Shown here: piece by piece, positions 3,901 to 58,303 of the stretch | Layout: each line of letters opens with the position of its first letter | Numbering within the stretch: the first letter of the stretch is position 1 | Assembly: GCA_038496445.1 (NCBI GenBank) | Contig: JALMLS010000626.1 | Coordinates: forward strand, 1-64,000 | Source of the DNA: Trichosphaerium sp. ATCC 40318 | Taxonomy: Eukaryota; Protista; Tubulinea | DNA: 64,000 nt | Direction of reading: 5' to 3' | Notes under the pieces: model-generated | Databases searched by the model: none | The model's input: only the letters and a program-made list of their open reading frames with translations | Told to the model about the DNA's origin: nothing | Position numbers and translations under genes: made by a program

Positions 3901-5553
3901 TTAGTCAATCACAACCAACTTCTCGAACTCCTCAGTATCGATTGCTTTTTGAATCATAAGCCAAGGTGTTAGTTCAACACCATCCAAGAATAAGTTCAAC
4001 ATAGCAGGTGAAAAACCGGATACCATTGCTACGCCAGGCTCTTCCTTTGTTACAGGAATAGAGCTAGAATGACGCAAGTTCCAGTAAACGATTTGAGGCA
4101 TATCGAATCCCATGGCTCTAAACTTAGACTTGATATCTTCGTGGCTTGTTCTGAAGGCACCAGTTTGAGCAGCGTCGAATTCCATGTCACTAAAGACAAA
4201 GATTGTTTCTGGCATGTCGTCAGCGTCGACTTTTCCGGTCTTGGCGAAATCAAGTAGTAGATCAAACACAGCAGCGAAGTTTGTGTTCATGCCCCAAGGC
4301 ATATTTTTGATAGAGGTAACACGGTCTCTTAGGCTTTTTCCTTGTACTTTGAAGAAAGAAGGAGTACTGTGGAAAGTAATAACGTGATTTTTGAATGGAC
4401 CCTCTGTGACCTCGCTCAAGATAAGACCAAGAGCGATAGCTACTTGCATAGGTATACCGCTCATAGATCCAGATACGTCTACGACAGAAAGGCACTTTGG
4501 TAAGTTCGAGGCAGCCTTGATTTTGTTGACTTTGTCGGTCCATTGGAGTTCTAGGGCTTGACCGTCTGCGACATTTCCGGCCAATAGCTTCTCGATGATA
4601 ACATGCGGCAAGATAGCTCCAGATGCGATTGTGGCTGTTCCAGCTTTGACTGCATCCAAGTACGCTTGATAACGCTCTTCGTCGTGTTTAGCGAAGATTT
4701 TTCTGTTATTCGCCATACACACAGAAGGGACACGTGTGTATACGATTTTCTTCCATTGATTCGCAGACATATGTACTTCAGGGACGCATGTGTACTTTCT
4801 CATTGCCGTGAGCGCTTTACGGTATTTATAGAGGCACGCTGGTTCTACGTAAGGTGCACCTTCTTCTCTTTTCTTTGGCTCAGGACAGTCAGGGAACATG
4901 AGCATAGCGATTTTTTGGGCGAGTTTAAACTTCTTGTCGTGTTTCTTGCCTGGAGAAGGCGCCCATTTGGCGCAAAGTGAGATTTTCGCTTTTTGCTCCA
5001 TTAGGTCGAAGTCCTCCTTGAGTTGTGTGGCGAATAGTTGTACTACAGCTTCGATTACGCGAGGAAAGTTTTTATCGTTTGAAATATCTTCGCCTTCTCC
5101 CTTTAGGGTTTTTCCAGAGCGTTCTGTAGGTTTAAGGAGTAGTTCGAGTAAATCCTTCCAGTAGCCAAACATAGGAACGCATTTGAGGTTGGCGATGAAA
5201 GTGTCTGGGTGAGTAGCCAAGAGCCACGTTAGGCAGGTGTAAAAGCATTTTCGCTCGTTCTTTCCGTTTCTTACATCACGTAGCTGAAATATGAGCTTGA
5301 GTGTATCTAAACGGCATTCATCCCACGATTTCTAATGTTGTAGTTAGTACAAAGTAATTTTACTTCATTTATCATTAAAACAAGTAAAACTGTATATGCG
5401 TACCTTAACAAGGTCGCAGATTGCGTCTGCTGGTGATGACGGTACAACTTGGAAGAAAAAGTCTACGCGGGCAGAAGATGATGTAGCGTGTGTGAGAGCG
5501 CCATTTTCAGTAACGGTAGTATTGGCAGGAGGTGTTGGCTTTGTGTTAGACAT
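3901..5553 (-). CDS. DUF2828 (TROVE-like) + vWA domain protein, 526 aa, one intron (5403-5332)
   Basis: Motifs TENGA.T, LKLIFQLRDVR.GK.ER, GYWKDL, SLCAKWAP, Y.RVPS, the vWA MIDAS DVSGSM, FVFSDMEFD and IVYWNLR. Confidence 0.9.
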
Positions 5554-9736: not shown

Positions 9737-11838
9737 CTATTGTGCAAGACATTTTTTGAAGTCAGCTTCAAATTCTTCCTTGTTAAGGTTTGTGCCAATA
9801 AATACGAGTCTGTTGATTCGTTTCTCTTTTGGACCCCAAGGAGATATTGGATTACCATCAAAGAGCATATGTACTCCTTGAAACACAAATTTTTCTTTCA
9901 TTCCTTTGATACCTATCGATAAAAAGATAAATAAAAGATAACTTCGCAATCAAAAAAAAAGAATCACGTACTCAAGATACCCTTCATTCTGAAAATATCA
10001 TTTCCACTCTTCTGCAATAGCCCTGACATCCATGTATTCAGTTTGGTCATATCCAAGTCGCCAGGCATCTCTATAGAGACAGATGTGACAAGATCCTGAG
10101 AAAAATATAAGATTCGGTTTTTAACAATAACGATCGTACAGAGTGTTCGTGTTCGTCTCCGGAAACTAAAAAGTCTTCCTCATTTTCTAATATCGCTTCC
10201 AAAGAGAATTTCTGAATGTTCATGATCTCATCAAGGTCTACTTTAGAGTGTAAAGTTGGGATTACCTTACAAAACAATAAGTTGTTGAAGACAATGTATG
10301 TAAAAAAAAAGTTGCTGTTACCTTTACACCTGAGTTAAGGCTTGATATACGTTTCTGTATAGTTTTCATCTCTTCTTCGTTGACTTTAAAGACAATAAGC
10401 TTCACGGAAAACCGGTAAACATTAAAACAACAAAAGTGTACCTAAATCTGTCTTGTTAAGGAGTACAACATCCGCAAATGCAATTTGTTCAACTGCCTCA
10501 TTCTCAACATCTGGATTTTCGTATTCTTGGTCCAAGTGTTGAATAATATGCTTGGCATCAACAACAGTGACAACACCTAAAAGAGATGGTGTTAAACAAC
10601 ACAAACAACAAATATCCCTTTCGAAAAAAAAAAAAAACAAACCAAACTTACCATCAAGTTTAAAGCGAGTGCTGAACTCTGGTACTGTAAAAAACGTCTG
10701 AATAATAGGCGCTGGATCAGCCACTAGATGAAAAACCGAGTTAGCACATGTTTTAGAGAGGGAGGTAACCCAAAGGCAAAGGCAATTGGTAGAGCGTACA
10801 TCCTGTTGTTTCTATCATAATGTAGTCAAATTCTGATTTCCTCTTTACCAAGTCTCCAAGAATTTTAATTAAATCACCACGAACAGTACAACAGATACAA
10901 CCGTTGTTCATTACTAGAATCTAATATAGCGTGAGAAATAAACGGAAAAACTCAGAAAAAACAAAGTTTTTTTTTCTCCTCCTCACCTCTTCAGCTTTAT
11001 TAAACTTTCCTTTTACAAGAGCATCATCGATTCCTATTTTACCGAATTCGTTCTCAATAACTACGCAAAACGTTACTACGCACGTACACGGAAAAGAATG
11101 TGGCGTACCGGCAATTCGTTTGCCATGGTTTTCTTCTAGTACGTAGTTGAGGAGTGTCGTTTTACCACTTCCCAAGAATCCTAAAGAAGAACAAAAAAGG
11201 TGAGGGACGCTAGTTTTTCTCACATTCGGTACCTGTGATTACAGTAACCGGAATGGTGGCATTTGCTACGTTAATCGCTGCTCCTTGGGTACAAAGTGCC
11301 TCACATAATTCGTAGACAATACGAGTTTGATCGTGTAGGAGCTCGATTGTGGTTTTTAACAGTTGAAGAGGATCTTCGTCGACCTTCTTTGGTCCTATAA
11401 CAATAGCGCGGCAGTAACTATTGACTATTAGGTTTGTCACGAAGCAAAATAAAGACATGTGTACCCTCCAGCTTGAACTATAAGGTTTCTGATTGTTCTA
11501 TTACAATTGTAAGCGTAGGTAGGAGTACACAACTGATTTGTACCCAACCCAGTTGTTTAATGTTTCCTTTGACGCTGCACTGGATACAATGAGCGATGCT
11601 ACGTGGTCTTTGATAGCTTTGTAAACTAAAAACATCAACGAGGTGTCGTATAATACTAATACGTACCTATACTAACCTCAGATACCACTGCTGCTAATTT
11701 AGGTTTGTTTTCTTCAGCAGGTTCTTTAACGCTATTCGCCAAATTGATGAATACTGTGGATGCAGAAAGGAGTTCAAAGACAAGTGCTTGCATGAGTTTC
11801 GAGCTGTAAGACAAATGGTGAATCTTTTTGAAAAGCAT
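9737..11838 (-). CDS. COG0523 CobW/CBWD (ZNG1-like) metal-chaperone GTPase with N-terminal extension
   Basis: IPVTVIT|GFLGSGKTT, IENEFG, NNGCICCTVRGDL, IETTG|LADPAP, VVDAKH, EQIAFAD, LNKTD, FRMKG, FQGVH, RLVFIG. Confidence 0.92.
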
Positions 11839-12255
11839 TTTTCGCCAGGGCGATCAAAAAAACCCTGGAATAGTTTTATACCGCCACAAGGTATTTTTTT
11901 TGAGATAATTCAAATTAAAATAAAGACAATACAAGGTTCGAATGCGTTTGTTTAGAATTTATTCAAAATGAAGCAGTCGCTCATTATTACAAGGTCATTA
12001 ACCCAACAAGTTTGGAAAACGCAACTCCAATGTGGTACCATCAGAGAATTGAGTGTTTTGGCGGACAGTAGCGTTTGGGTCGAGCTTATGTTTCTTTCCG
12101 CTACGGTGACAGTGAATAAAGCGAAATATATGCGTTTGGAGGTGAAAAAAAAAAAACCAAAGCATTTCTGTTTTAGTTTAAATAACGCGTTTTTGGGATT
12201 TTTGAAGTCACGTGCTCATAAAAAAAAGGAAAAACCACCAATCCGTACTTTTTGT

Positions 12256-12962
12256 CTACGCCGTAGATCTTGTCTGCTTTGGATTGAGGACCAGCTTGAG
12301 ATTTCAAGTCATCAATAACGACTTGAAATTTTTCTTCTGCGCCTACGTCAACGACATATTTCGAGGTAGCGGTCCATCTAATAGGCTTAGAACAATACCA
12401 ATACCTTTATTTACCTTCCAGTAGTGGAGAAACCCTACGAGAAGTGTTAGAAGCAAGTTTTTCTGTTCAAACAAAATTCTTGAGAGTAACATACCTGTAC
12501 CCATCCACAAGTGATTTCTAGACGAATCTCGTCAGTACCGTCTCTTCTACACGAGTTCAGTTAGCAAATTTAGACCAACGAGTGGTGAGAGGTATGTATG
12601 TACCTGTAACTTGCGTTAAATGCCATTGAAAGCGAATAGGTGTTGTATGTGTTGTTATGTATTTGAAGCTAAGGCTGGTGAACGACGCACATGTCGTCCA
12701 GTTATTTCGCGAGATAGCCTCATAGTACCTTTAAAACACTTACACACGCGTATTCACTGAGTTACACGCCCTTTCTGTAGTAACCGACAATACTACATGC
12801 TTTCACAGGCAGCATTCTTGCGTAGAACGTAATGACAGCGGTCAAACCCAGACCTCTTTTGGCTTTTAGGGATGGTGTATAAGCGTGTTTTTGCCGCATT
12901 CGCATTCAGCAGGTGTAGTTCTGCTGTTTACGAAGTATAATACTGCAAATTTGTCGGTTCAT
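12256..12962 (-). CDS. Hypothetical multi-exon protein
   Basis: Open exon-like stretches with GT/AG ends (YYEAISRNNWTTCASF.., RDGTDEIRLEITCGWVQ, ..KADKIYGV*). Start uncertain. Confidence 0.35.
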
Positions 12963-13345
12963 AGTAATATTACTCAATATCACGTGATTCCGCTATTATG
13001 ATAACATGGTGACATCTACGAAGGAAGCGCTATAAAAATACGAGCAGTTTGCAGCATATTCACAAAAGGTTGTTCCTTATCTCGTTGCAGCCTACTTGCT
13101 CATCTCATCTTTAGTACTCTTTGATTTCTTAGTCTTTTTGATTATCGGAGGTTTCTCAATTCTGGAAAAGGGTAGAACAACTTAGGATTGAGAGTAGTTT
13201 CTCCAGAGAGTGTGCACTCTCTAAAAATGACGTTATACTGCTTACAACATTAAAAGGGTTGTCAAGTATTTTACACTACGTATGGCGTCATATTTTTAGG
13301 AGATTTACACGCTTCCTTGAATCACAAGCCAAAAAACGCCACAGG

Positions 13346-14388
13346 ATGGAGAGCATCTCATCAAACTCTTTTTCAAGTGTTTATAGAATAGGATGTTCTA
13401 TAGGTATTGGTGCTACGTCGCAAGTATACAAGGCAGAAGAGAAACGAAGCAAAAAAAAACTTGCGCTCAAAATAATTTACCCACATTTCTTTCGTGATCA
13501 CGAGGACCTAGTACAGGCTGAAATAGAGGTTTTAAGCAATTTTAGACACAATAATATTGTTCGACTTGTAGACGCACACTGCCACAAAGGTACACGCCTA
13601 CCTGCGCTAGTATATTATTAATTACTTTCCTTTAACATAACATTGTCTTTTTTAGATGTAGTAATGCTTGTACTCGATCGCGCTTTGCTTAGTCTTGATG
13701 CATTCTCAGCGACTTATAAACTACCCACAATACGCATAAAGTCTATTATGATGCAATGTTTAGAAGGATTACGATATATGCATGGCTTGGGTTATGTACA
13801 CAATGGTAAGCGTTTCACATCTTCCGATGTTTCTGAATAACATCCGAGAAATTTCTACGTTGTTGTCATCCTTGCTAAACGTTATGTCTAGACGTTAAGA
13901 TGGGTAACATTCTTATTGGCGCCAATGGAACTATAAAATTGACAGACTTTGGGAACTGTTCTTTGATTTCAGATGCTCAAGAAGGAAAAGTAAGACGAAG
14001 AGGAACACTTGAGTATTTGGCGCCTGAAATTTTTATTCACAAAAGATGGTCTGATAAACGTGATATATGGAGCCTTGGTCTGACATGTTTTCGATTGGTT
14101 ACAGGGAATCTTCCTTTTAAAATATTGGATAATGATTTACCATCTTTTGTCATGGGGTTGACGTTATTATACAAGACAAAGACATACGATTGGGATTCTT
14201 TTCAAAACCAATACAAAAACTTAAAAGATGATCTTGTTTTATTTTTACAACATTTACTTCATCCCGTACCTGAGAGGCGTGCTTCAGCGGAAGAGTGCCT
14301 CGATATGGCTTGGCTTGGGGTGTCGTTAGACAGGGTAAAGGATAGACATTGGTTTAAAAAACGAGCTGTACATAAATTGACGAAATAA
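13346..14388 (+). CDS. Ser/Thr protein kinase (non-RD), 2 introns
   Basis: IGIGATSQV, ALK, HN|DVKMGNIL, DFG, GTLEYLAPE, DIWSLG. Confidence 0.92.
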
Positions 14389-14558: not shown

Positions 14559-17202
14559 ATGCTGTTTAAAGTAGTTCATGGGCACCAACGTGCGTAGAGA
14601 TTAGTAAATACGCGCTTTCTGTATGTAAATAAGGTAGTGTGCCCAAAGAAGCGTCAATACTCGTACAAGCCAACTGTAGCGTTGTATTTGGTGAATCAAA
14701 GGAGTTTCTTCGATATGACACTTGGGGCGTCGTTAAAAGTATACACACTCGATGACTGGTACGGCATTTCTAATGAGAAAATAAACCGACATGGCGCAAG
14801 ACCAATCCTTGAAAAGTAAGCAAATGCAAGCGATTGAGCTTGGCTTGAAAGTAATTTTTTTCAAAAATATAGATATGATCATTGTCTTCCTACTTGTCTT
14901 CAAACTTTATACAACGATTATGAATGGCAATCCTGGGAGTTCTTGTACGAAAGTGTTTACACCTATTTTGTATAAGTGTTTTGTCCGTGTTGACACGCAG
15001 CAGGCACGTGCCTGACGGATTTTGGGATAAAAGAGATCACGAGATTGGTAAATTTAACTCAATGGCTAAGACGATTGGCGTTAAGACTATGGATGATTGG
15101 TATCATGTAAAAAAAAGAGAAGTGCAGCTATTAGGTGCCAGTGGAGTGATACAAGTAAAGTACATGTCGAGAACCATTTTTCTCATCTTGTCTTGTACTA
15201 ACATTATCTTTTTTTTTCACAGTTACAAAGGATCGTATGTTCTGGCGTTGACAAGCATATTTTCAAATTTTGATTGGGAGCCATGGAAGTTCGCGTGCGT
15301 AGTTTTTGGCACTTTTCGCCTGGTCTATAAAAATGAGACATCATTACCACATGTGTTATTGAAAGCTGAACAACTAGTAATACTGAATTTTGCCTTAGAA
15401 ATAACAATAAGTTGTGGTGGCTTCAAGCAGCTGTAGAGATGAGAATCCAACCTGTGGCAAAAGAATTACGTGTTTTTATACTAGAAGATTGGTATAAAAT
15501 TAAAGATGAACAGGTTGCTATAATCGCACCTGACTTGATGCACAAGTACTATTTTTTTTTTAAGTGTCTTTTTTATTTTTTTTACGTTTATCCAATAGAC
15601 ACAATACGTTACAGGGTTTAGTATCAAATACATTCAAACACTATGATTTTAAGGAATGGGGAGCGAGGTAATTCATTGGTATTTAAACACCCAAGCTTTT
15701 TTTTGGATTGAAATGTAAATCGAATTTTTTTTTTGCTTTTTGTTGGTCAGTACTTCTTCTTTCTTCTTGGACATCTGACCATGGTTTTCAAACGCGAATG
15801 AGGGTAAAAATTAATCTATTTGCTATTTAACTTTGGTTCAGGCAAGTACCTCATAGTTACTGGCATTCACTTTCAAATAAGCGCGAGCATGTTGAAAGGA
15901 TTGGTGAAAAATTGTATCTAACAACTCTTGATGATTGGGTTGGTATACCAATAAAATTATTGATGTCTCATGGAGCATCAGCATCTATATCGAGCATGCT
16001 CAGATCCATATATCCTGAATTTGAGTGGGATGATATGTACGGAGAGGAACCTTTAAATTTTCAAAAAAGTGGAACATTTTATTCTTGGTTTTTTGACCTA
16101 ACTTGCAAACAGCGAGCCAAGGTTCAAACATCAATCTGGATTTTGGCGGAATACATCAAATCAATTAAAGTATTTGACAGAATTAAAAGACAAACTGCAA
16201 TTGACAAATCCAGCTAGATGGTAAGTACTGCTTTTTTGAACAAATCAAGATTTATTTCTGCCTGAGTTGCCGTATTTGTGTTTTATTGACAACAGTAAAT
16301 AGGTACACACTATCCAAGGAACAAATAGCTGGTGGGGGAGGCTCAGGGATCCTTAAATTTTTCCCTAGATTCGTCACGTTACTTCATCCAAACTACAACT
16401 GGAATTGGCCTGCCTTTTCAACTAAATTCAAAACAGCTAGCCAAAAGCACGTTAACACTCATTTTCACTATATCCTTATGGGAGCACGTGATATAACTTA
16501 CTCATCTTAGTTGGCTTTTACAATGTACTCAGTGGCTATTTGAAGGTTATGAGGTACATCAAGAGCACTGCGTAGGCTCCAGAAGGTCTTCTGGTGTTCA
16601 AGTGACTGTTGATGTATTTGTGTCTGCTTTTAATGTTGGCTTAGAATACCAAGGTAATTTCTTGCTTACCTTTAAAACCACCTTGGCTCATGTCAACTTT
16701 TAGGAGAACATCATTACGAAGACTTACATTGTAAAGGATCTGTTACGGCTTACGAAGCCAGAGACTTTGAGAAACTTGAACTTTGTAAAAAATCAGGTAG
16801 CTCCAAAGAAATAAGACTGGCTTCACTATTCTGACGCTCATTGTTACAACTGTAGGAATAACTATTGTACCTGTACCATACTGGTATGTTTTAATCGAAA
16901 AGATTTCAGTCACGTGACTTTTTTTAGGTGGAAAGGTGATATGGAATCTCTGGCTGCAACAATTGTATTTTATAAACCTAGTGTTCCACTTAAATATCCT
17001 AAAGGTGTTAAACCTCTTGTAGATTTACCACAAGAGTTATTTCGCCCTTCAAAGAGTAAGAACACTCAAAAGCATGTTTGTACTCAGCTAATGTTTTTTT
17101 TTTTAAGCTATGATGGCACCTTCTATAGAAGGATCTAGAGTGGTACACATAAACACAGAACAGCAATGGCGACCACTATCATTCACACGAAAACCAGTAT
17201 GA
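14559..17202 (+). CDS. Tandem Trp-rich repeat protein (5 repeats) with C-terminal Vsr/DUF559/RAP-like nuclease domain, copy 1
   Basis: Repeats P.GFW..(x)..LGVK..DDWY..G...L.KY..S....L..IYP...W..WKF. C-terminus QEH..VDVF..GLEYQG|EHHY..RD.EK..C..G|ITIVPVPYW|WKG..ESLAATI. Last exon ambiguous (stop ~17152 or 17202). Confidence 0.8.
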
Positions 17203-17341: not shown

Positions 17342-20300
17342 TTAGTATGAAGATTCATCATCCTGCTTCATATAGTCCAGAATTGTTCTCTTAGGAGGTT
17401 CTTTTGTTTTAGGTTTTGTCTTTGTTTTATGTGATGTTTTACGCTTTGGTTTTGTTGAACTATAATATTCTAGTTTTTCTGTCTTTTCTCTTGGCAGATA
17501 TGGTTTGTGTTTTGGCTTTTGTTGGGGTTTTGGTTTTGGCTTTTCAGCGATTACCCACTGGCTTAGAGTATCTTGCTTGAGCGGATGAGCTTTTATCTTA
17601 GACGATTCTCCATCAAAACCTTTAAAAGACTTGTTAGTGATGAGGTATGAACACTGTCTTTTCAATAAAACTTACTTTTTGAAAAAGCATAAAAAAATAG
17701 AGATACAACTTGACAAGAAAAGGCTTTGCCAAGTAATCTTCTTGCTTCCTTTACTGTAATCATATGACGTTCTACACCTAATTTCTTTCTTTTCATTGAA
17801 TAAGACATATTAGGATCAACAGATTGACCTATCCATTCTGCATCGAACCCTTGAATACTACAACGTATAAGTTTACAAAAAAAAAAAGCAAAAAAAAGTC
17901 TTTACTCCAAAACTGTGGTTGTGTTGCTGTTCTTGTTGTCTGAAAGATAAAATGTGTATAAACAAGTTTTTCATAACAAAATAACATGCGCACATTTCCA
18001 CGTGCTTGATTTTCAAACACTCAACCTTTCCTGTTTTTGTTAAAACTGGGTTATATCGACCGAGTTTATTTCTGGCTTCATCAGTCATCACTTCTGCAGC
18101 AGTTATTCCTGTCCATTTTAGATAGTTCCCTGTTGTTATAGCATAAGCCTTACTACCATCCATGTATTTACCCTAGGGGTCAAATATTTTAGAAAAGAAG
18201 TGAGCAACAAAAAAAAAAACAAGTTGTAATTTTGGCTCTAAAAACTCAACCCACATGTCTTCGCTCTAGTTAAATGATAACACAAACATAGTTTTAAACT
18301 TTTCTTAAATACAAGTACAGTAAATAATATTTTGAAATACTGAAAGCCATGAATGGCTATACTGAACCAAAAAAAAAAAGAGTTACCTGTGATAGAATGT
18401 CGTTGATCTCAAGAATTGCATTATCTACACCACTACTTGCGTCGAGTCGGATATTACTCCAGTAATAGCGATTACGTCTAGCAGCGCTGTAGTGCTTGGC
18501 ATCAAGCTTAACTGGGGGAACACCCAAGATGTCAGTTATCTTTTGTTTTGAAGCCTTGGACACTAATTCAAAGAGTTGGTGATGGCGAACTGGATGGTTT
18601 GCAGACAAACTTACTGCTTGCTACGTTTTCTACCAAGAAGTATGGAAATCCAGAAATACTTGCTATCCAGCCTATTATAACTCTCACGTGAGCAAAGTTG
18701 GCTTTCGTGTCTGCATCACCAAACCCCTTTTTTTGCTACAAAATATCTTAACAAAAAAGAAAAGAGATTCTTTTAGCGACGCACACCAAGGCAAGATAGT
18801 GCCGAACAAGGAGGGGACGCTATGACAATATCTATATCTTCTTTATACTTTACTTTTAAATCCTGTAAGACTTGTTGTGTTATCTCTGTGACGTCATTCT
18901 TTACCTTTACGAAAACGTCCTTCTCGTATCCACTAAGAAAAATAAACATCAAATAATTAACTATAAATCCATGACATACTATACCAAACACGCCTTCTCT
19001 ATGGCCCTATTCATAACCACATGACACGCTGGGTCAATTTCAGAATAATAAAACCGCTTGATCTGTGTAACAATGAGAACGACAAGCAAATGACGGAGAA
19101 CAATATGGTTTAAGAAAAAAAAAACGTACAAGTACATCCGCTCTTATAAGTGACATTAGTGCGCCACCCATGCCATCAAATAATGATAATATTACATAAC
19201 CCTCTTTAGATTGAAGAGATCGTTGTGGTTGGTCACGACTTATGTACCCCTGACTAGGAGTAACATCTTCTGGCTGCAAAACAAATTCTACTTCTTCGAA
19301 ATCGAAGGTCTCCATTTTCACTGCACTCTGAGTTGCTGCAACATCTCCTTCATCTTCTTTGTCTTTGTCTTCTTTTTCTTCTTCTTTGTTATCACCGTTT
19401 TCAATATTCCTTTTATTTTCCATAATTACTTCGTCTACAACAATATCTTCAAGTGTATCAGAGTTATGTCTTTTTGGAGGCGGAGGAATTGGCTTTGATA
19501 CTTTTCTTCTTTTTTTCTTTTTTTTGTTTATACAAGCAGTTGGTGCCTATAACTTTATCAACAATAAATGGCAGTGAAATCAATATACCTTTCGTTTTGT
19601 TGACTGAGATACTGCTGTAAATAAATGTGGCCAGTCACCTTCTAATATTTTAAAGTCATGAGGACGAGTACGTTTAGTTTCTTCATCCCAAATATGTGTA
19701 CAAAAATATCCCTCTCCGTTTGATTTTTTTTTAGTCTCAGCTTCTTCCTTTGAAGATGCCAAATAAACTATTTCGTGCATGTGACTTAACGAGTAATGAG
19801 TAGAATCAAACTCGCCAATGATTAGTTCAGTCACATCATCTTATAGAAGACAGAGTAAGCCACGTGTTAACAAGGATAAAAATCCAAAAAAAAAACGTAC
19901 TTTCTGGAGTTTTCATTTTTGGCGTTATTTGGTCTGTAGTGTACATTTTACGTATTTTAACATAAGGATCCTCGTTAACGGCCAACGGATTTATTATTTC
20001 CGCTACGAACCGTCGGTTTAAACGAATTTTAAACTTGTTTATGTAAATTTCGTTCAAAACGTACTGATTACGCCAAAAATCGGTCTACGTCCTCTAATAG
20101 ATATCGTTGCTCTATTAAAAAGTTATTAATTGTTAGTGTGCTAAAAAAGAAATCCCGCGCGTTATAAAATTATATATCGCTATCTGTATAGCGTTGAACA
20201 ACTGACGTACACATTATATGCTCGAAAAACAGTGTTTGTGTCAAGATTTTTAAAAGACGCATGATACGTGTGTCCTACGTTCTGAGGATGTAACCAGTGG

Positions 20301-20353
20301 CTTTTAGGCACTAATTTATCGCCTAGCTTAAATTCAGCCTCCCACTCAGCCAT
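17342..20353 (-). CDS. C5-cytosine DNA methyltransferase, DNMT3-like catalytic domain with BAH-like N-terminus
   Basis: Motif I LSLFDGMGG, II SEID, III NDV, IV ASPPC, VI LVENVAS, VIII SAARRNRYYWSNI, X RRLLGKAFSCQVV. Confidence 0.88.
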
Positions 20354-55368: not shown

Positions 55369-58056
55369 CTACACAATATCTATCGCTGTCGCTGGGGCCA
55401 TTAGGTGCTTTGTTGATCCCACCCCTAAAACCGATTAATATTAAAAACAGCCTGAGCACACTTTTTTTTTGCTAATGATTACCTAGCGCTTCGAGAGGGT
55501 CCACTGTTGTCAAGGGGGTTGTGCCAATACCTTCAACCAACCTCATTGATGTATCAACAGCATTGATCGTTGCAGCTAGCTGCTCTGGTGTACCATCCCA
55601 CCAATAAGGTATTAACACGAGCTTGATACCTACGAGATTACTCTTAGTAATTTTCGTTTTACTAATATTTTCCGTACCTCTATCTGTGCATACTTGTAAC
55701 TTCTCTGCGTCTCTACAAACTTGAAGAGCTAGAGGAGGGCTGTGTGGGGTCACTTGATCAAGAAAATGTTGTTCACCTGTACAAAATGAATAAACTGAAC
55801 TAGTAAAAGACTCTTACCTTGATACTCCAATGCAATATCGTATGTTGGTATAAACACATCCACAGATAGTGAGCGCCCTGTAGAAGGTCTGATACCGATA
55901 ATATGTTCTTCTAGAATCGCTAAAGGAGCTAGCAAGCGACGGACGCACTGAACCATGTACCTGTCATAATTTTAATCAAATTAGAAAAAAAACAGTCGGA
56001 AAAGAAAAAAAAAGGTGAACTGTACCTCTGCTTTGATTTTTTGTTAAACACGCTGAATTTATCCCATTCCCAATCATGATTCATGCCAGAGAATCGTAGC
56101 ATCCTTGGAAAGTATCTCCGAACGCCTGCACCGCCAACACTTACAATGTCTTGCTCTGACACTCGATACCTTAAAAAGCTATGAGACTTCTTTGTTTTGC
56201 TGCCATTCGCTGTACCATGCTTCTGGGCTATCAATTCTTAGTTGCTTTTTAGCTCTCGTGAAGAAATTCTCGAAAGATCCAGCTCGCAACCAGTAGTCCG
56301 TTTGGTGTTTTTTACTATTAAATAAATTTATGTGTCAGTTTTGTTTTACTTTTAAAGCGGTATGCTTCGTAACGCACGCAAAATTCCATGAGTATCTATG
56401 GTAAACAATACGTAGAGCATTTTGAAATGATGATCCAACGCTAAAATATGTTGTCAGTGACTATAGGTAACGAAAGCTAAAGAGGCACAAAACTTACGCT
56501 TTTATGGTATTAAACATAGGTGCGACATCATTGGACGTAGCGTTGTACCACCCACTGAGATCTTTTATATCCAGTTTATATGCTAGAGTATCGAATTCCT
56601 TGCGCGCTTGAGATATCCAGACGCTCTGGGTAGGCGTACTAAGAGGAAAAAGGCAAGTCAGCAAATAGGTTAACAGAACTAGGTAGTTTTCCCAAAAAAA
56701 ACGTGTACATAAACTTTTCACGTTGCCAAGCTTCTTTTGGGTAGATTGTTTTCAATGCACTGTATATGGAGCGGTCATATCTGAATAATAAACAACGTCA
56801 ATAGGGTAGTTCAAGATTGTTAAAAACCAAGAGATTCCAATGAAAAACCTTACTTTTCTAAAACAGGTTTTCCTCCTACAGCATTTATATCTTGTGGTAA
56901 CAAGTTATACCACCCTTCAATATTACTTATATCCAAAGTTTGTTTAATGTCATCAAAGAGCGCTTTTTGGTTTTTCTTATCGTCCCAGTAACCACGTGCG
57001 TTACGTCTAAACAACATCAAAAAATGCAGGAAAAAAAAAAGCAAAGTAACATACGCAAATTTATGTTCTTTCCAATCAAGCTCAGGGTAAAGATTTGACA
57101 ATGTCAAGAATATAGAGTCATCATATCTGGCGAGGACGGATTGACCACCTCGTTTGGTAATATCTGCATGGAGTATATTATACCAGTCTGTGAGTACTTT
57201 GACGCCAAGTTCTTGACCTATTTGTTGCATCTTTTTTTTCCGCAAGCCCTCGTCATCCCAAAAACCACGTGGGGAATTACTGAAATAATCAGAACGTTGT
57301 ATGCAAAAATGGTTCATTTTGTTGCCAACAATAAAAAATATTGACAAGAAAACAGTAATGTTACTTCATATTAATTAAAATCACGTGCCTGAACATATCG
57401 ATAATCCATTTCTTTCTTGGATACATAGCACACAGTGTTCTGTAGATTGATCCTTGGTATCTATCAAACACTGTAAGAACATCTCAGGTCAGTGCTTTTA
57501 ATCTATTTGCACCTGTTTGTCAAGATGCTTTGTGCACCGTGTTCGGTTAGATTTTTATAGGTTACACTGTACCAATCATCTAGTTCTTTAACGCCAAGGC
57601 TCTGTCCAATACTGTCAAATTTATCTCGTTGGTTTTTAATACTATTCCAGTGGTATTGAGGAACATTCCTGGTGCGTTGTTAGCATCTTTTAAGGTGTCA
57701 AGCGAAAAACGAACTTGAATTTCCATGCCCAAGAGTGAAGTGGGTACAAGTGTAATAAGACTCGAGATATGGAACCATTGTACCTACACAGTTACCATTA
57801 GCGTCTTGCTGTGTAGAAAAACTATAAAATGACATACTTAGTTGCTAGGACAGCCCCATGCTGCGCAAATCGCTCAGTTGATACGCTGTACCACTCATCT
57901 AGGTGCTTTACGTCCAACCGTTCGCCAATTGCATCTAATTTCGCTCGTTGATTTGTTTTACTATCCCAAAAACGATTTCTGGCGCGCCTGGGCGCGAATT
58001 AGCATATACATAAGATAATAAGTTACAAATACGCTTACGTACCCTACTGTACGCAT
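55369..58056 (-). CDS. Tandem Trp-rich repeat protein (6 repeats) with C-terminal Vsr/DUF559/RAP-like nuclease domain, copy 2
   Basis: Repeats such as NSPRGFWDDEGLRKKKMQQIGQELGVKVLTDWYNI..GGQSVLARYDDSIFLTLSNLYPELDWKEHKF. C-terminus EEH..VDVFIP..ALEYQG|EQHF..RDAEK..C..G|IKLVLIPYWWDG..EQLAATI. Confidence 0.85.
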
Positions 58057-58303
58057 GCTTGCGCGTCATGACCACGTTACCTAACAATGCGAAGATATTT
58101 TAGCACGTGTGGCAAAATAAAACTAGTAACACGGCTGATGGTACTTTTTTGGGCGCACACTTAACTTATTGCACGTGCACGTGCAATCAAACACACTTTG
58201 CTTTCGCTAATGAAAAAGATTTACAGTAAACAAACGCTTTTTCGCGTGCTTAAGTGTTTATTGTTAAAAAAACAACGCAAACACGCACGCACCACGTAAT
58301 ACA

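What the first reader, a model, noticed from the sequence alone, without database searches (positions are those of the whole stretch)
14559..17202. Modular tandem-repeat + PD-(D/E)xK nuclease family (copy 1): candidate repeat-programmed nuclease
Seen: manual splicing gives five ~75-aa repeats with a fixed scaffold (P.GFW; LG(V/I)K..DDWY; GG..L.KY..S; L..IYP...W..WKF) and variable positions between. These are followed by a domain with E..D..EYQG.E.H and RD.EK..C..GI.L..PYWW. Known: this C-terminal pattern fits the Vsr/DUF559/RAP branch of PD-(D/E)xK folds, and helical repeats plus RAP is the architecture of FASTK/OPR-RAP organellar RNA-processing proteins. The repeat does not look like PPR, OPR or TALE. 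Inference: a repeat array that reads nucleic-acid sequence and positions a nuclease. The N-terminus (..KKRQYS) could be a mitochondrial presequence.
Basis: partly seen in the sequence, partly recalled or inferred. Interest (0 to 1): 0.85.

Follow-up and report, generated by a model that had tools for sequence, protein, structure and literature searches.

The report
Helical-repeat array fused to Vsr-like nuclease
This is a real, spliced and transcribed gene for a protein with five ~75-residue tryptophan-rich helical modules and a Vsr/DUF559/RAP-type nuclease domain; it belongs to a very large family of amoebae, giant viruses and bacteria for which I found no published study, so its target and role are still inferred.

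Summary
A 14-exon gene at 14637-17202 (+), probably starting at a mini-exon at 14559, encodes about 545 aa: five ~75-aa repeats and a 117-aa C-terminal domain. RNA contigs confirm six 3' splice junctions, one of them a GC-AG intron.

The gene is not an orphan. One repeat finds 3,993 cluster representatives with 4-25 repeats each, and 87 of the best 150 carry the same C-terminal domain. Sources include Amoebozoa, Heterolobosea, a giant-virus-like contig and bacteria. All are labelled hypothetical, and no paper was found. First readers of this scan noted further paralogues on other pieces of this genome.

The C-terminal domain folds as alpha-beta-beta-beta-alpha-beta-alpha. It aligns at Z 8-10 with DUF559, I-Bth0305I, Vsr and RAP domains, and 27 of 79 homologous domains hit Pfam DUF2726. 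Copy 1 keeps seven of the eight near-invariant positions.

The repeat is a five-helix module with no significant solved relative. It matches DUF4046-type models, and it is not PPR, OPR or TALE.

Several relatives add a LigE-type DNA ligase, and many carry presequence-like leaders.

Best reading: a nucleic-acid-binding array that delivers an active endonuclease, probably in mitochondria, with DNA slightly favoured over RNA. A per-repeat recognition code is untested. Verdict: new variant of a known kind.

The parts
14559..14570 (+). Putative first mini-exon (ATG, MLFK), followed by a putative 63-nt GT..AG intron at 14571-14633
   Evidence: Read from the sequence. It is the only upstream ATG that can be spliced in frame: read through, the ATG frame meets TAG at 14595. 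No RNA cover.
14634..14815 (+). Exon with the short basic leader and the first half of repeat 1 (repeat 1 = 14685-14942)
   Evidence: Frame and junction enumeration; repeat profile E 2e-20.
14873..14944 (+). Exon: second half of repeat 1 (ends W..WEF)
15001..15159 (+). Exon: first half of repeat 2 (repeat 2 = 14943-15292). Donor 15159/15160 was chosen over the alternative at 15165.
   Evidence: E 2e-24; one-residue insertion relative to the profile.
15223..15294 (+). Exon: second half of repeat 2
15399..15545 (+). Exon: first half of the degenerate repeat 3 (repeat 3 = 15400-15662)
   Evidence: E 1.5e-8.
15599..15667 (+). Exon: second half of repeat 3
15842..16036 (+). Exon: repeat 4, almost all in this exon
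   Evidence: E 1.8e-16; 3' junction 16036/16113 seen in RNA.
16113..16220 (+). Exon: first half of repeat 5 (repeat 5 = 16120-16417)
   Evidence: Both junctions seen in an RNA contig; (E 4.6e-17).
16303..16446 (+). Exon: second half of repeat 5 and start of the nuclease domain. It is followed by a GC-AG intron (16447-16510).
   Evidence: GC..AG joint seen in contigs of two runs.
16511..16653 (+). Exon: nuclease domain helix 1 and strands 1-3, with the conserved Asp (VTVD, 16602-16613) and LEYQG
16704..16796 (+). Exon: the conserved His of E(H)HY, and the helix carrying RDFEK (16757-16774)
16856..16883 (+). Micro-exon: the last core strand (GITIVPVPYW)
   Evidence: the 16-nt loose end of an RNA contig at 16927 matches this exon's 3' end.
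16928..17055 (+). Exon: end of the nuclease domain (W of PYWW and the last helix; the domain ends near 16994) and start of the non-conserved tail
17108..17202 (+). Last exon: tail and TGA stop
   Evidence: Junction 17055/17108 seen in RNA.

Best explanation
The gene encodes a basic protein (pI about 8.9) with two parts.

Part 1 is five concatenated five-helix, Trp-rich modules of 75-78 aa. This is the DUF4046-type module, which occurs 4-25 times per protein across the family. The modules follow one another almost without linkers. I infer that they lie along a nucleic acid and give affinity and site selectivity.

Part 2 is a C-terminal PD-(D/E)xK domain of the Vsr/DUF559/DUF2726/RAP branch. In copy 1 the family's near-invariant Asp, Glu-Tyr-x-Gly, His, Asp and Lys are intact. 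I infer that it is an active metal-dependent endonuclease that nicks or cuts where the array docks.

The likely place of action is the mitochondrion, and the substrate is slightly more likely DNA than RNA.

Shown: the gene structure, transcription and splicing of the 3' half, the repeat count, family membership, the fold class of the C-terminal domain, and conservation of its signature.

Inferred: nucleic-acid binding by the repeats, catalysis, the substrate, the compartment and the biological role.
For: - Gene and splicing.
- Five repeats.
- Family size and conserved architecture: 3,993 representatives at E<=1e-3; 87 of the best 150 carry the same C-terminal domain, placed directly after the last repeat.
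- Nuclease fold: a confident model of the closest homologue (pLDDT 86.6) with the alpha-beta-beta-beta-alpha-beta-alpha core. It aligns at Z 10.2 to DUF559 (3hrl), 10.1 to I-Bth0305I, 9.0-9.6 to Vsr, and 8.3-10.2 to RAP domains of mitoribosomal proteins and FASTKD4.
- Pfam: DUF2726 hits in 27 of 79 domains, plus DUF559 and PvuRts1I_N.
- Signature: near-invariant D, P, E, Y, G, H, D, K columns. Copy 1 keeps all but the Pro.
- Charge: family median pI 9.05, and 76% of members are above pI 8.
- DNA lean: LigE-type ATP-dependent DNA ligase fused after the nuclease domain in P0049, P0065 and P0107. The family is also present on a giant-virus-like contig and in bacteria. Viral proteins whose models match this nuclease domain are annotated as homing or restriction endonucleases.
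- Mitochondrial lean: 34 of 80 homologues with a leader of 20 aa or more have no acidic residue in the first 20 aa, against about 8% expected; 59 of 80 have net charge of +2 or more.
Against: - No binding or cleavage data exist for any member; no paper was found.
- The repeat has no significant solved relative (best Z 4.5), so nucleic-acid binding rests on charge, architecture and faint likeness to HTH/SAM-like DNA-binding domains.
- The canonical Lys of (D/E)xK is Gln in EYQG, so the active site is non-canonical.
- Copy 1 has almost no room for a presequence, and I could not run a targeting predictor.
- The 5' half has no RNA support.
- The structural evidence comes from a homologue (P0022, 28% identical overall), not from copy 1 itself, because a spliced protein could not be handed to the remote tools.
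Confidence: 0.55

Rival explanations
1. Organellar RNA-binding or RNA-processing protein of the helical-repeat + RAP type, an analogue of FASTK, OPR-RAP and HPR-RAP proteins. The array binds a specific mitochondrial transcript or rRNA piece. The RAP-like domain cleaves RNA, or merely binds it.
For: - The best structural matches include RAP domains of Toxoplasma and Tetrahymena mitoribosomal proteins, Polytomella ASA2 and human FASTKD4 (Z 8.3-10.2).
- UniProt names some family members 'RAP domain-containing protein'.
- Homologues have presequence-like leaders.
- First readers note many paralogues in this genome, as is typical of organellar RNA-binding families (unchecked notes).
- A published survey found Amoebozoa and Excavata depleted in Pfam-RAP proteins, which leaves such a niche open (PMC8190603).
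Against: - None of 79 C-terminal domains hits Pfam RAP at E<=0.01, while 27 hit DUF2726.
- Relatives are fused to a DNA ligase, not an RNA ligase.
- The family also occurs in bacteria and on a giant-virus-like contig.
- The repeat is not an alpha-solenoid of 34-40 aa.
Confidence: 0.28
2. Homing-endonuclease-like or conflict-related DNA nuclease. This would be a selfish or defensive family exchanged among amoebae, their giant viruses and bacteria, with the repeats serving as modular DNA-binding domains comparable to NUMODs.
For: - The nuclease domain matches I-Bth0305I, and phage and giant-virus proteins annotated as homing or restriction endonucleases.
- P0004 lies on a giant-virus-like contig.
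- The bacterial member P0177 sits beside an HNH fragment and a PIN toxin-antitoxin pair.
- The taxonomic spread is patchy and paralogues are only about 28% identical.
Against: - Copy 1 has 13-14 spliceosomal introns and ordinary neighbours, so it is a long-resident host gene.
- There is no association with an intron, intein or transposon here.
- No meaningful PADLOC match: only two weak hits, mREase_II to the nuclease domain of P0104 and PDC-S37 to P0004.
- Many homologues have presequence-like leaders.
Confidence: 0.1
3. Eukaryotic Vsr/Dcm-like pair. The nuclease would nick T:G mismatches that arise from deamination of 5-methylcytosine made by the C5 DNA methyltransferase encoded tail-to-tail about 140 bp downstream.
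For: - The fold is Vsr-like.
- The neighbour at 17342-20353 (-) shows methyltransferase motifs FDGMGG, SPPCS and RNRYYWSN.
- There are weak hits to the methyl-directed PvuRts1I-type nuclease family.
- An earlier first-reader note (s1-372711) raised this idea.
Against: - The second copy in this window (55.4-58.1 kb) is far from this methyltransferase gene.
- Two eukaryotic homologue loci have no methyltransferase Pfam among their called neighbours.
- The Vsr motif FxHGCxWH is absent from copy 1.
- Five sequence-diverse repeats are not needed for a mismatch-specific nickase.
- With many paralogues in a gene-dense genome, one adjacency is expected by chance.
Confidence: 0.04
4. Catalytically dead scaffold. 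The repeats mediate protein-protein contacts and the nuclease fold is only structural, as in ASA2 of the Polytomella ATP synthase.
For: A RAP-like fold is used structurally in ATP synthase and in mitoribosomes. The repeat has no proven nucleic-acid-binding relative.
Against: The D, E, H, D, K signature is near-invariant across 79 very divergent domains, and copy 1 keeps it. The family is basic overall. Relatives are fused to a ligase.
Confidence: 0.03

Closest known systems
Helical-repeat + RAP proteins (human FASTK/FASTKD family, Chlamydomonas OPR-RAP, apicomplexan HPR/RAP mitoribosomal proteins)
   Same: An N-terminal array of helical repeats is followed by a C-terminal Vsr-like PD-(D/E)xK fold. 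The structural match to their RAP domains is Z 8.3-10.2. Many homologues have leaders that look organelle-targeting.
   Different: The repeat unit is a 75-78-aa five-helix module, not a 34-40-aa helical hairpin. Pfam RAP does not hit this C-terminal domain (0 of 79). The family extends to bacteria and a giant-virus-like contig. Some members carry a DNA ligase.
DUF559 / DUF2726 / Vsr endonuclease clade, including the homing endonuclease I-Bth0305I (PDB 3hrl, 1vsr, 1cw0, 3r3p)
   Same: Same core fold (Z 9.0-10.2, rmsd 2.6-3.5 A over about 91-105 residues; 1cw0 aligns more loosely at rmsd 6.2 A). Same motif layout: Asp on strand 2, E-x-x-G-x-x-H after strand 3, and a helix with D/K before the last strand. 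DUF2726 passes its Pfam cut-off in some homologues (P0104 29.6 bits, P0187 27.9 bits).
   Different: Those are mostly stand-alone bacterial or phage domains, or are joined to other DNA-binding modules. Here the partner is a tandem Trp-rich repeat array in an intron-rich eukaryotic gene. The Vsr motif FxHGCxWH is absent.
Pfam DUF4046 (PF13255), uncharacterised, mainly Bacillota
   Same: The repeat model superposes on a Bacillota DUF4046 cluster model (TM 0.75, 79 residues, rmsd 2.6 A). Precomputed PF13255 hits are listed for six family members. The language-model search points the same way.
   Different: My own hmmscan never returned PF13255, so sequence-level membership is unconfirmed. DUF4046 has no known function.
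TALE, PPR and PUF programmable repeat proteins
   Same: Tandem modules with a fixed scaffold and variable surface positions; some (TALEN-like designs, PPR-SMR/DYW) deliver an enzyme.
   Different: No evidence for one-module-one-base reading. The unit is twice as long, and the variable positions are scattered with no evident specificity residues.

Membership tests
PD-(D/E)xK superfamily, Vsr/DUF559/DUF2726 branch | alpha-beta-beta-beta-alpha-beta core fold | tested here: met
   The AF2 model of homologue P0022:388-660 (pLDDT 86.6) has H149-163, E170-178, E184-191, E196-201, H217-233, E237-242 and H249-259. It aligns at Z 10.2 to 3hrl, 10.1 to 3r3p and 9.0-9.6 to Vsr. The test was on the homologue, not on copy 1 itself.
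PD-(D/E)xK superfamily, Vsr/DUF559/DUF2726 branch | Conserved acidic and His signature (Asp on strand 2; E-x-x-G-x-x-H) | tested here: met
   Near-invariant D, E, Y, G, H, D, K in 79 domains. Copy 1 has VTVD, LEYQGEHH and RDFEK. The classical Lys position is Gln.
PD-(D/E)xK superfamily, Vsr/DUF559/DUF2726 branch | Pfam model match above the curated cut-off | tested here: inconclusive
   27 of 79 homologous domains hit DUF2726 at E<=0.01. P0104 and P0187 exceed the 24.7-bit cut-off. Copy 1's exons searched separately give nothing, and the spliced protein could not be submitted.
RAP domain (PF08373) | Match to the Pfam RAP model | tested here: not met
   0 of 79 domains of this type match at E<=0.01. 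Only a second C-terminal type in other family members gives sub-threshold RAP hits (19.6 bits against a cut-off of 24.2).
RAP domain (PF08373) | Structural equivalence to solved RAP domains | tested here: met
   Z 10.2 (9i05_Xr), 8.9 (6rd4_2), 8.7 (FASTKD4, 9gek) and 8.3 (6z1p_AS).
FASTK / OPR / HPR / PPR helical-repeat families | 34-40-aa helix-turn-helix repeats forming an alpha-solenoid | tested here: not met
   The unit is 75-78 aa with five short helices. There are no Pfam PPR, OPR or FAST hits.
DUF4046 (PF13255) | Match to the family model or fold | tested here: inconclusive
   Fold match TM 0.75 to a DUF4046 cluster, and precomputed PF13255 hits on six homologues. There were no PF13255 hits in my hmmscans.
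Homing endonucleases (I-Bth0305I-like) | Gene embedded in a self-splicing intron, intein or other mobile element | tested here: not met
   This is a nuclear-type gene with 13-14 spliceosomal introns between a kinase gene and a methyltransferase gene.
Vsr proper (T:G mismatch endonuclease) | FxHGCxWH motif; mismatch-specific nicking | tested here: not met
   The motif is absent from copy 1; a related YEFHGDYWHG motif occurs only in the family's other C-terminal type. Activity is not testable here.
TALE/PPR-like programmable readers | A few hypervariable specificity positions per repeat that correlate with the target bases | tested here: inconclusive
   Column entropies show about 30 variable positions spread through the module and no evident pair. 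No targets are known, so no correlation could be tested.

The most novel reading that the evidence does not exclude
The 75-78-aa Trp-rich module is a new modular nucleic-acid-reading unit, with each module contacting a defined stretch of bases. The family would then be a natural set of programmable nucleases. In the ligase-bearing paralogues it would be a cut-and-reseal enzyme acting on mitochondrial genomes of amoebae, and borrowed by giant viruses and bacteria.
Probability: 0.12. Interest if true: 0.9.

Novelty: new variant of a known kind. Interest (0 to 1): 0.6.

Why it matters
If the inferred function holds, this is a fourth kind of repeat array joined to a RAP/Vsr-like nuclease fold, beside the FAST, OPR and HPR types. 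It is built from a different and much larger module. It is abundant in the lineages (Amoebozoa, Heterolobosea) that a published survey found depleted in RAP proteins (PMC8190603).

The family is very large: about 4,000 clusters at 50% identity. I found no published study of it. Its nuclease signature is nearly invariant, and in some members a DNA ligase follows the nuclease. That makes the idea of a recognise-cut-reseal enzyme directly testable at the bench.

If the modules turn out to read sequence, the family would be a new scaffold for designed nucleic-acid-binding proteins.

For genome annotation, the result gives a gene model, a verified GC-AG intron and a family assignment for proteins now labelled hypothetical.

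Tried and rejected
- Pfam on single exons of copy 1 and copy 2 gave nothing useful. Exons are too short, and a spliced protein cannot be passed to the remote tools by reference. I therefore worked through homologues found with the one uninterrupted repeat (window:57057-57296:-).
- Sequence-profile searches of the Protein Data Bank with the repeat (A1) and with the C-terminal domain (A2) found nothing.
- Foldseek and VIA-align on the single-repeat model gave only weak matches: SAM, TetR HTH and Slx4 CCD, with Z no higher than 4.5. I do not assign a known fold.
- The word-index homologue search with P0022 returned only two proteins. The profile search with A3 worked.
- hhalign between the two C-terminal domain types (A2 against A4) aligns the equivalent motifs but is not significant (probability 1.6%).
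- PADLOC gave only two weak hits (mREase_II on P0104, PDC-S37 on P0004). NCBIfam named only the ligase tail of P0065.
- I tried to identify the organism from a neighbouring conserved gene. The best hits are only 44-45% identical (liverworts, an aphelid), so the organism stays unidentified.
- Literature searches for DUF4046, DUF2726, DUF559 plus mitochondria, and RAP plus Amoebozoa found no paper on this family.
- The Vsr/Dcm-pair idea is rated unlikely, for the reasons given under the rivals.
Full report
**1. The gene**

The window is eukaryotic: 35-40% G+C, with many short introns. I enumerated every in-frame GT..AG pair between the coding cores. This gave a 14-exon model from 14637 to the TGA at 17200-17202, encoding 543 aa.

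One junction (16446/16511) had no GT..AG solution, and I proposed a GC-AG intron. Contigs of two public RNA runs then showed exactly that GC..AG joint. They also showed joints 16036/16113, 16220/16303, 16653/16704 and 17055/17108. A 16-nt loose end at 16927 matches the end of the 28-nt micro-exon 16856-16883. The 3' half is therefore transcribed and spliced as modelled.

The 5' half has no RNA cover. There each chosen junction restores the family repeat profile, for example WEF|FRHVPDGFW.

The frame is closed upstream by TAG at 14595. The alternative is an internal ATG at 14715.

**2. The repeats**

The paralogue on the minus strand (about 55.4-58.1 kb) contains one repeat uninterrupted by introns (window:57057-57296:-). 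I used it for the exhaustive search.

- It found 3,993 cluster representatives at E<=1e-3, 1,927 at E<=1e-10 and 279 at E<=1e-30.
- Each of the best 150 proteins has 4-25 matching units.
- A profile built from 1,021 units finds five units in copy 1, with E-values from 2e-24 to 1.5e-8. The third unit is degenerate, and the first has lost its N-terminal Trp.
- The nearly invariant residues are three Trp, the Tyr of DWY and the final Phe.
- About thirty other columns are variable. They are scattered through the module, with no evident pair of specificity positions.

AlphaFold2 folds the unit with confidence (pLDDT 89.7) into five short helices, followed by an aromatic, extended YP..W..WKF segment.

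No solved structure matches significantly. Foldseek finds nothing below E = 3.7. VIA-align against 48,161 chains reaches at best Z 4.5, on TetR HTH, Slx4 CCD and similar small helical domains.

Among predicted structures the unit superposes at:
- TM 0.83 on clusters from Tubulinea and Nucleocytoviricota;
- TM 0.75 on a Bacillota DUF4046 cluster;
- TM 0.48 on phage-integrase SAM-like domains.

The language-model search also pointed to DUF4046. Precomputed PF13255 hits are listed for six homologues. My own hmmscans never returned PF13255.

**3. The C-terminal domain**

87 of the best 150 repeat proteins carry the same 117-residue domain, placed 0-12 residues after the last repeat in the 44 proteins examined for this. 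In 79 aligned domains the nearly invariant residues are an Asp, a Pro, Glu-Tyr-x-Gly-x-x-His, and Asp-x-x-Lys. Copy 1 keeps all but the Pro: VTVD, LEYQGEHH, RDFEK and PYWW.

Pfam results for the 79 domains:
- DUF2726 is hit by 27 of 79, and above its cut-off in P0104 and P0187.
- DUF559 is hit by one, and PvuRts1I_N by two.
- RAP is hit by none.

A model of the closest homologue (P0022:388-660: two repeats plus the domain; pLDDT 86.6) shows the alpha-beta-beta-beta-alpha-beta-alpha core. VIA-align gives:
- Z 10.2 to DUF559 protein 3hrl (rmsd 2.6 A over 91 of 94 residues) and to the RAP domain of a Toxoplasma mitoribosomal protein;
- Z 10.1 to I-Bth0305I, and 9.0-9.6 to Vsr;
- Z 8.9 to Polytomella ASA2, 8.7 to FASTKD4 and 8.3 to Tetrahymena 6z1p chain AS;
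- Z 5-7 for generic PD-(D/E)xK enzymes.

Foldseek agrees. In AlphaFold DB the nearest clusters are family members that UniProt names 'RAP domain-containing protein (Fragment)' or 'DUF559 domain-containing protein'.

**4. Who has it, and with what**

Named sources are:
- Amoebozoa: Cavostelium, Physarum and Trichosphaerium;
- a heterolobosean;
- bacteria: Candidatus Vecturithrix and a planctomycete;
- many metagenomic contigs.

P0004 lies on a densely packed contig whose neighbours carry Pfam families suggestive of a giant virus. The bacterial gene P0177 is a singleton beside an HNH fragment and a PIN toxin-antitoxin pair. Two long eukaryotic contigs show ordinary neighbours. All members are labelled hypothetical. 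Four literature searches found no paper on the family.

Three variations in architecture are informative:

(a) P0049, P0065 and P0107 add an ATP-dependent DNA ligase domain after the nuclease. In P0065 it is of the minimal LigE type: PDB 6gdr at E 6e-25 and NCBIfam NF006592 at E 1.6e-45. I did not check that locus.

(b) P0104 and P0126 have two nuclease domains.

(c) Some members, including P0004 on the giant-virus-like contig, end instead in a different Vsr-like domain with YEFHGDYWHG. It gives sub-threshold RAP and REase_MTES_1575 hits. hhalign aligns the equivalent motifs of the two types, but not significantly.

The repeat array therefore travels with several nucleases of one fold clade.

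**5. Compartment and substrate**

The family is basic: median pI 9.05.

Of 80 homologues that start with Met and have at least 20 residues before the first repeat:
- 34 have no Asp or Glu in the first 20 residues, against about 8% expected from family composition;
- 59 have a net charge of +2 or more;
- several read like textbook mitochondrial presequences.

This is a crude count, not a predictor. Copy 1 has only about 12 residues before a degenerate first repeat, so its own targeting cannot be decided.

For DNA:
- the nearest sequence families are DNA nucleases;
- relatives are fused to a DNA ligase;
- the family has bacterial members and a member on a giant-virus-like contig;
- the repeat's faint structural neighbours are DNA-binding domains.

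For RNA:
- the architecture parallels repeat + RAP proteins, which decorate mitoribosomes and process organellar RNA (PMC11652630; PMC8190603);
- first readers report many paralogues in this genome.

I lean slightly towards DNA.

**6. The methyltransferase neighbour**

The gene ends about 140 bp from the 3' end of a convergent gene whose ORFs show FDGMGG, SPPCS and RNRYYWSN. These are motifs of a C5 DNA methyltransferase of the DNMT3 type, by my reading of the motifs.

A Vsr/Dcm-like partnership is conceivable. However, the window's other copy is far from this gene. Two eukaryotic homologue loci have no methyltransferase Pfam among their neighbours. The Vsr-specific motif is also absent from copy 1. 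I rate this idea at a few per cent.

**7. Verdict**

The gene is one member of a very large, conserved family on which I found no published study: DUF4046-type five-helix repeat arrays fused to Vsr/DUF559/DUF2726/RAP-branch nucleases. It is a new variant of the known 'helical repeats + RAP-like nuclease fold' kind. It is not a member of the FASTK, OPR, HPR or PPR families, and it does not meet Pfam RAP.

The mechanism (array binds, nuclease cuts, probably in mitochondria) is inferred from anatomy and relatives. A per-module recognition code is possible but untested.

**Limits**

The structural evidence comes from a 28%-identical homologue and from the paralogue's repeat. The N-terminus and the 5' junctions lack RNA support. 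No targeting predictor, HHpred database or model coordinates were available. The organism could not be identified.

Noticed in passing
window 16447-16510: A GC-AG intron (donor GCACGT). I predicted it because no GT..AG pair keeps the frame. Spliced RNA contigs from two runs then confirmed it.
   Followed up: yes
window about 55370-58060, minus strand: A second paralogue, only about 30% identical to copy 1. It has several repeats, one of them uninterrupted (57057-57296), and the same EYQG / PYWW C-terminal domain. ORF 55472-55753 appears to run through an intron.
   Followed up: partly
window 17342-20353, minus strand: A convergent neighbour with C5 DNA methyltransferase motifs in separate exon ORFs: FDGMGG (motif I), SPPCS (motif IV) and RNRYYWSN. 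Its 3' end lies about 140 bp from the stop codon of copy 1.
   Followed up: partly
window 13259-14388, plus strand: An upstream Ser/Thr protein-kinase-like gene, read from motifs in the ORF translations. It ends only about 170 bp before the putative start of copy 1, so the intergenic and promoter space is very small.
   Followed up: no
window 16165: T>C in the RNA contig of run X1 (TTA to CTA, synonymous Leu). It is probably a strain or allele difference.
   Followed up: partly
window 3901-5220, minus strand: A long exon of a DUF2828/DUF7788 (TROVE/vWA-like) protein. The best relatives are only 44-45% identical (liverworts, an aphelid), so the source organism has no close sequenced relative in the collection.
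   Followed up: partly
P0049, P0065, P0107 (homologues from Cavostelium and metagenomes): Repeat array + nuclease + LigE-type ATP-dependent DNA ligase in one polypeptide, with basic leaders that look like presequences.
   Followed up: partly
L002 (Logan contig, 41.8 kb), gene at 10001-12529: A nine-repeat family member (P0004) on a densely packed contig whose neighbours (RNA_pol_L, P9_TM, DUF5899) suggest a giant virus. It ends in a different Vsr-like domain (YEFHGDYWHG).
   Followed up: partly
P0104, P0126: Family members with two copies of the C-terminal nuclease domain in tandem. This might mimic a dimeric nuclease.
   Followed up: no
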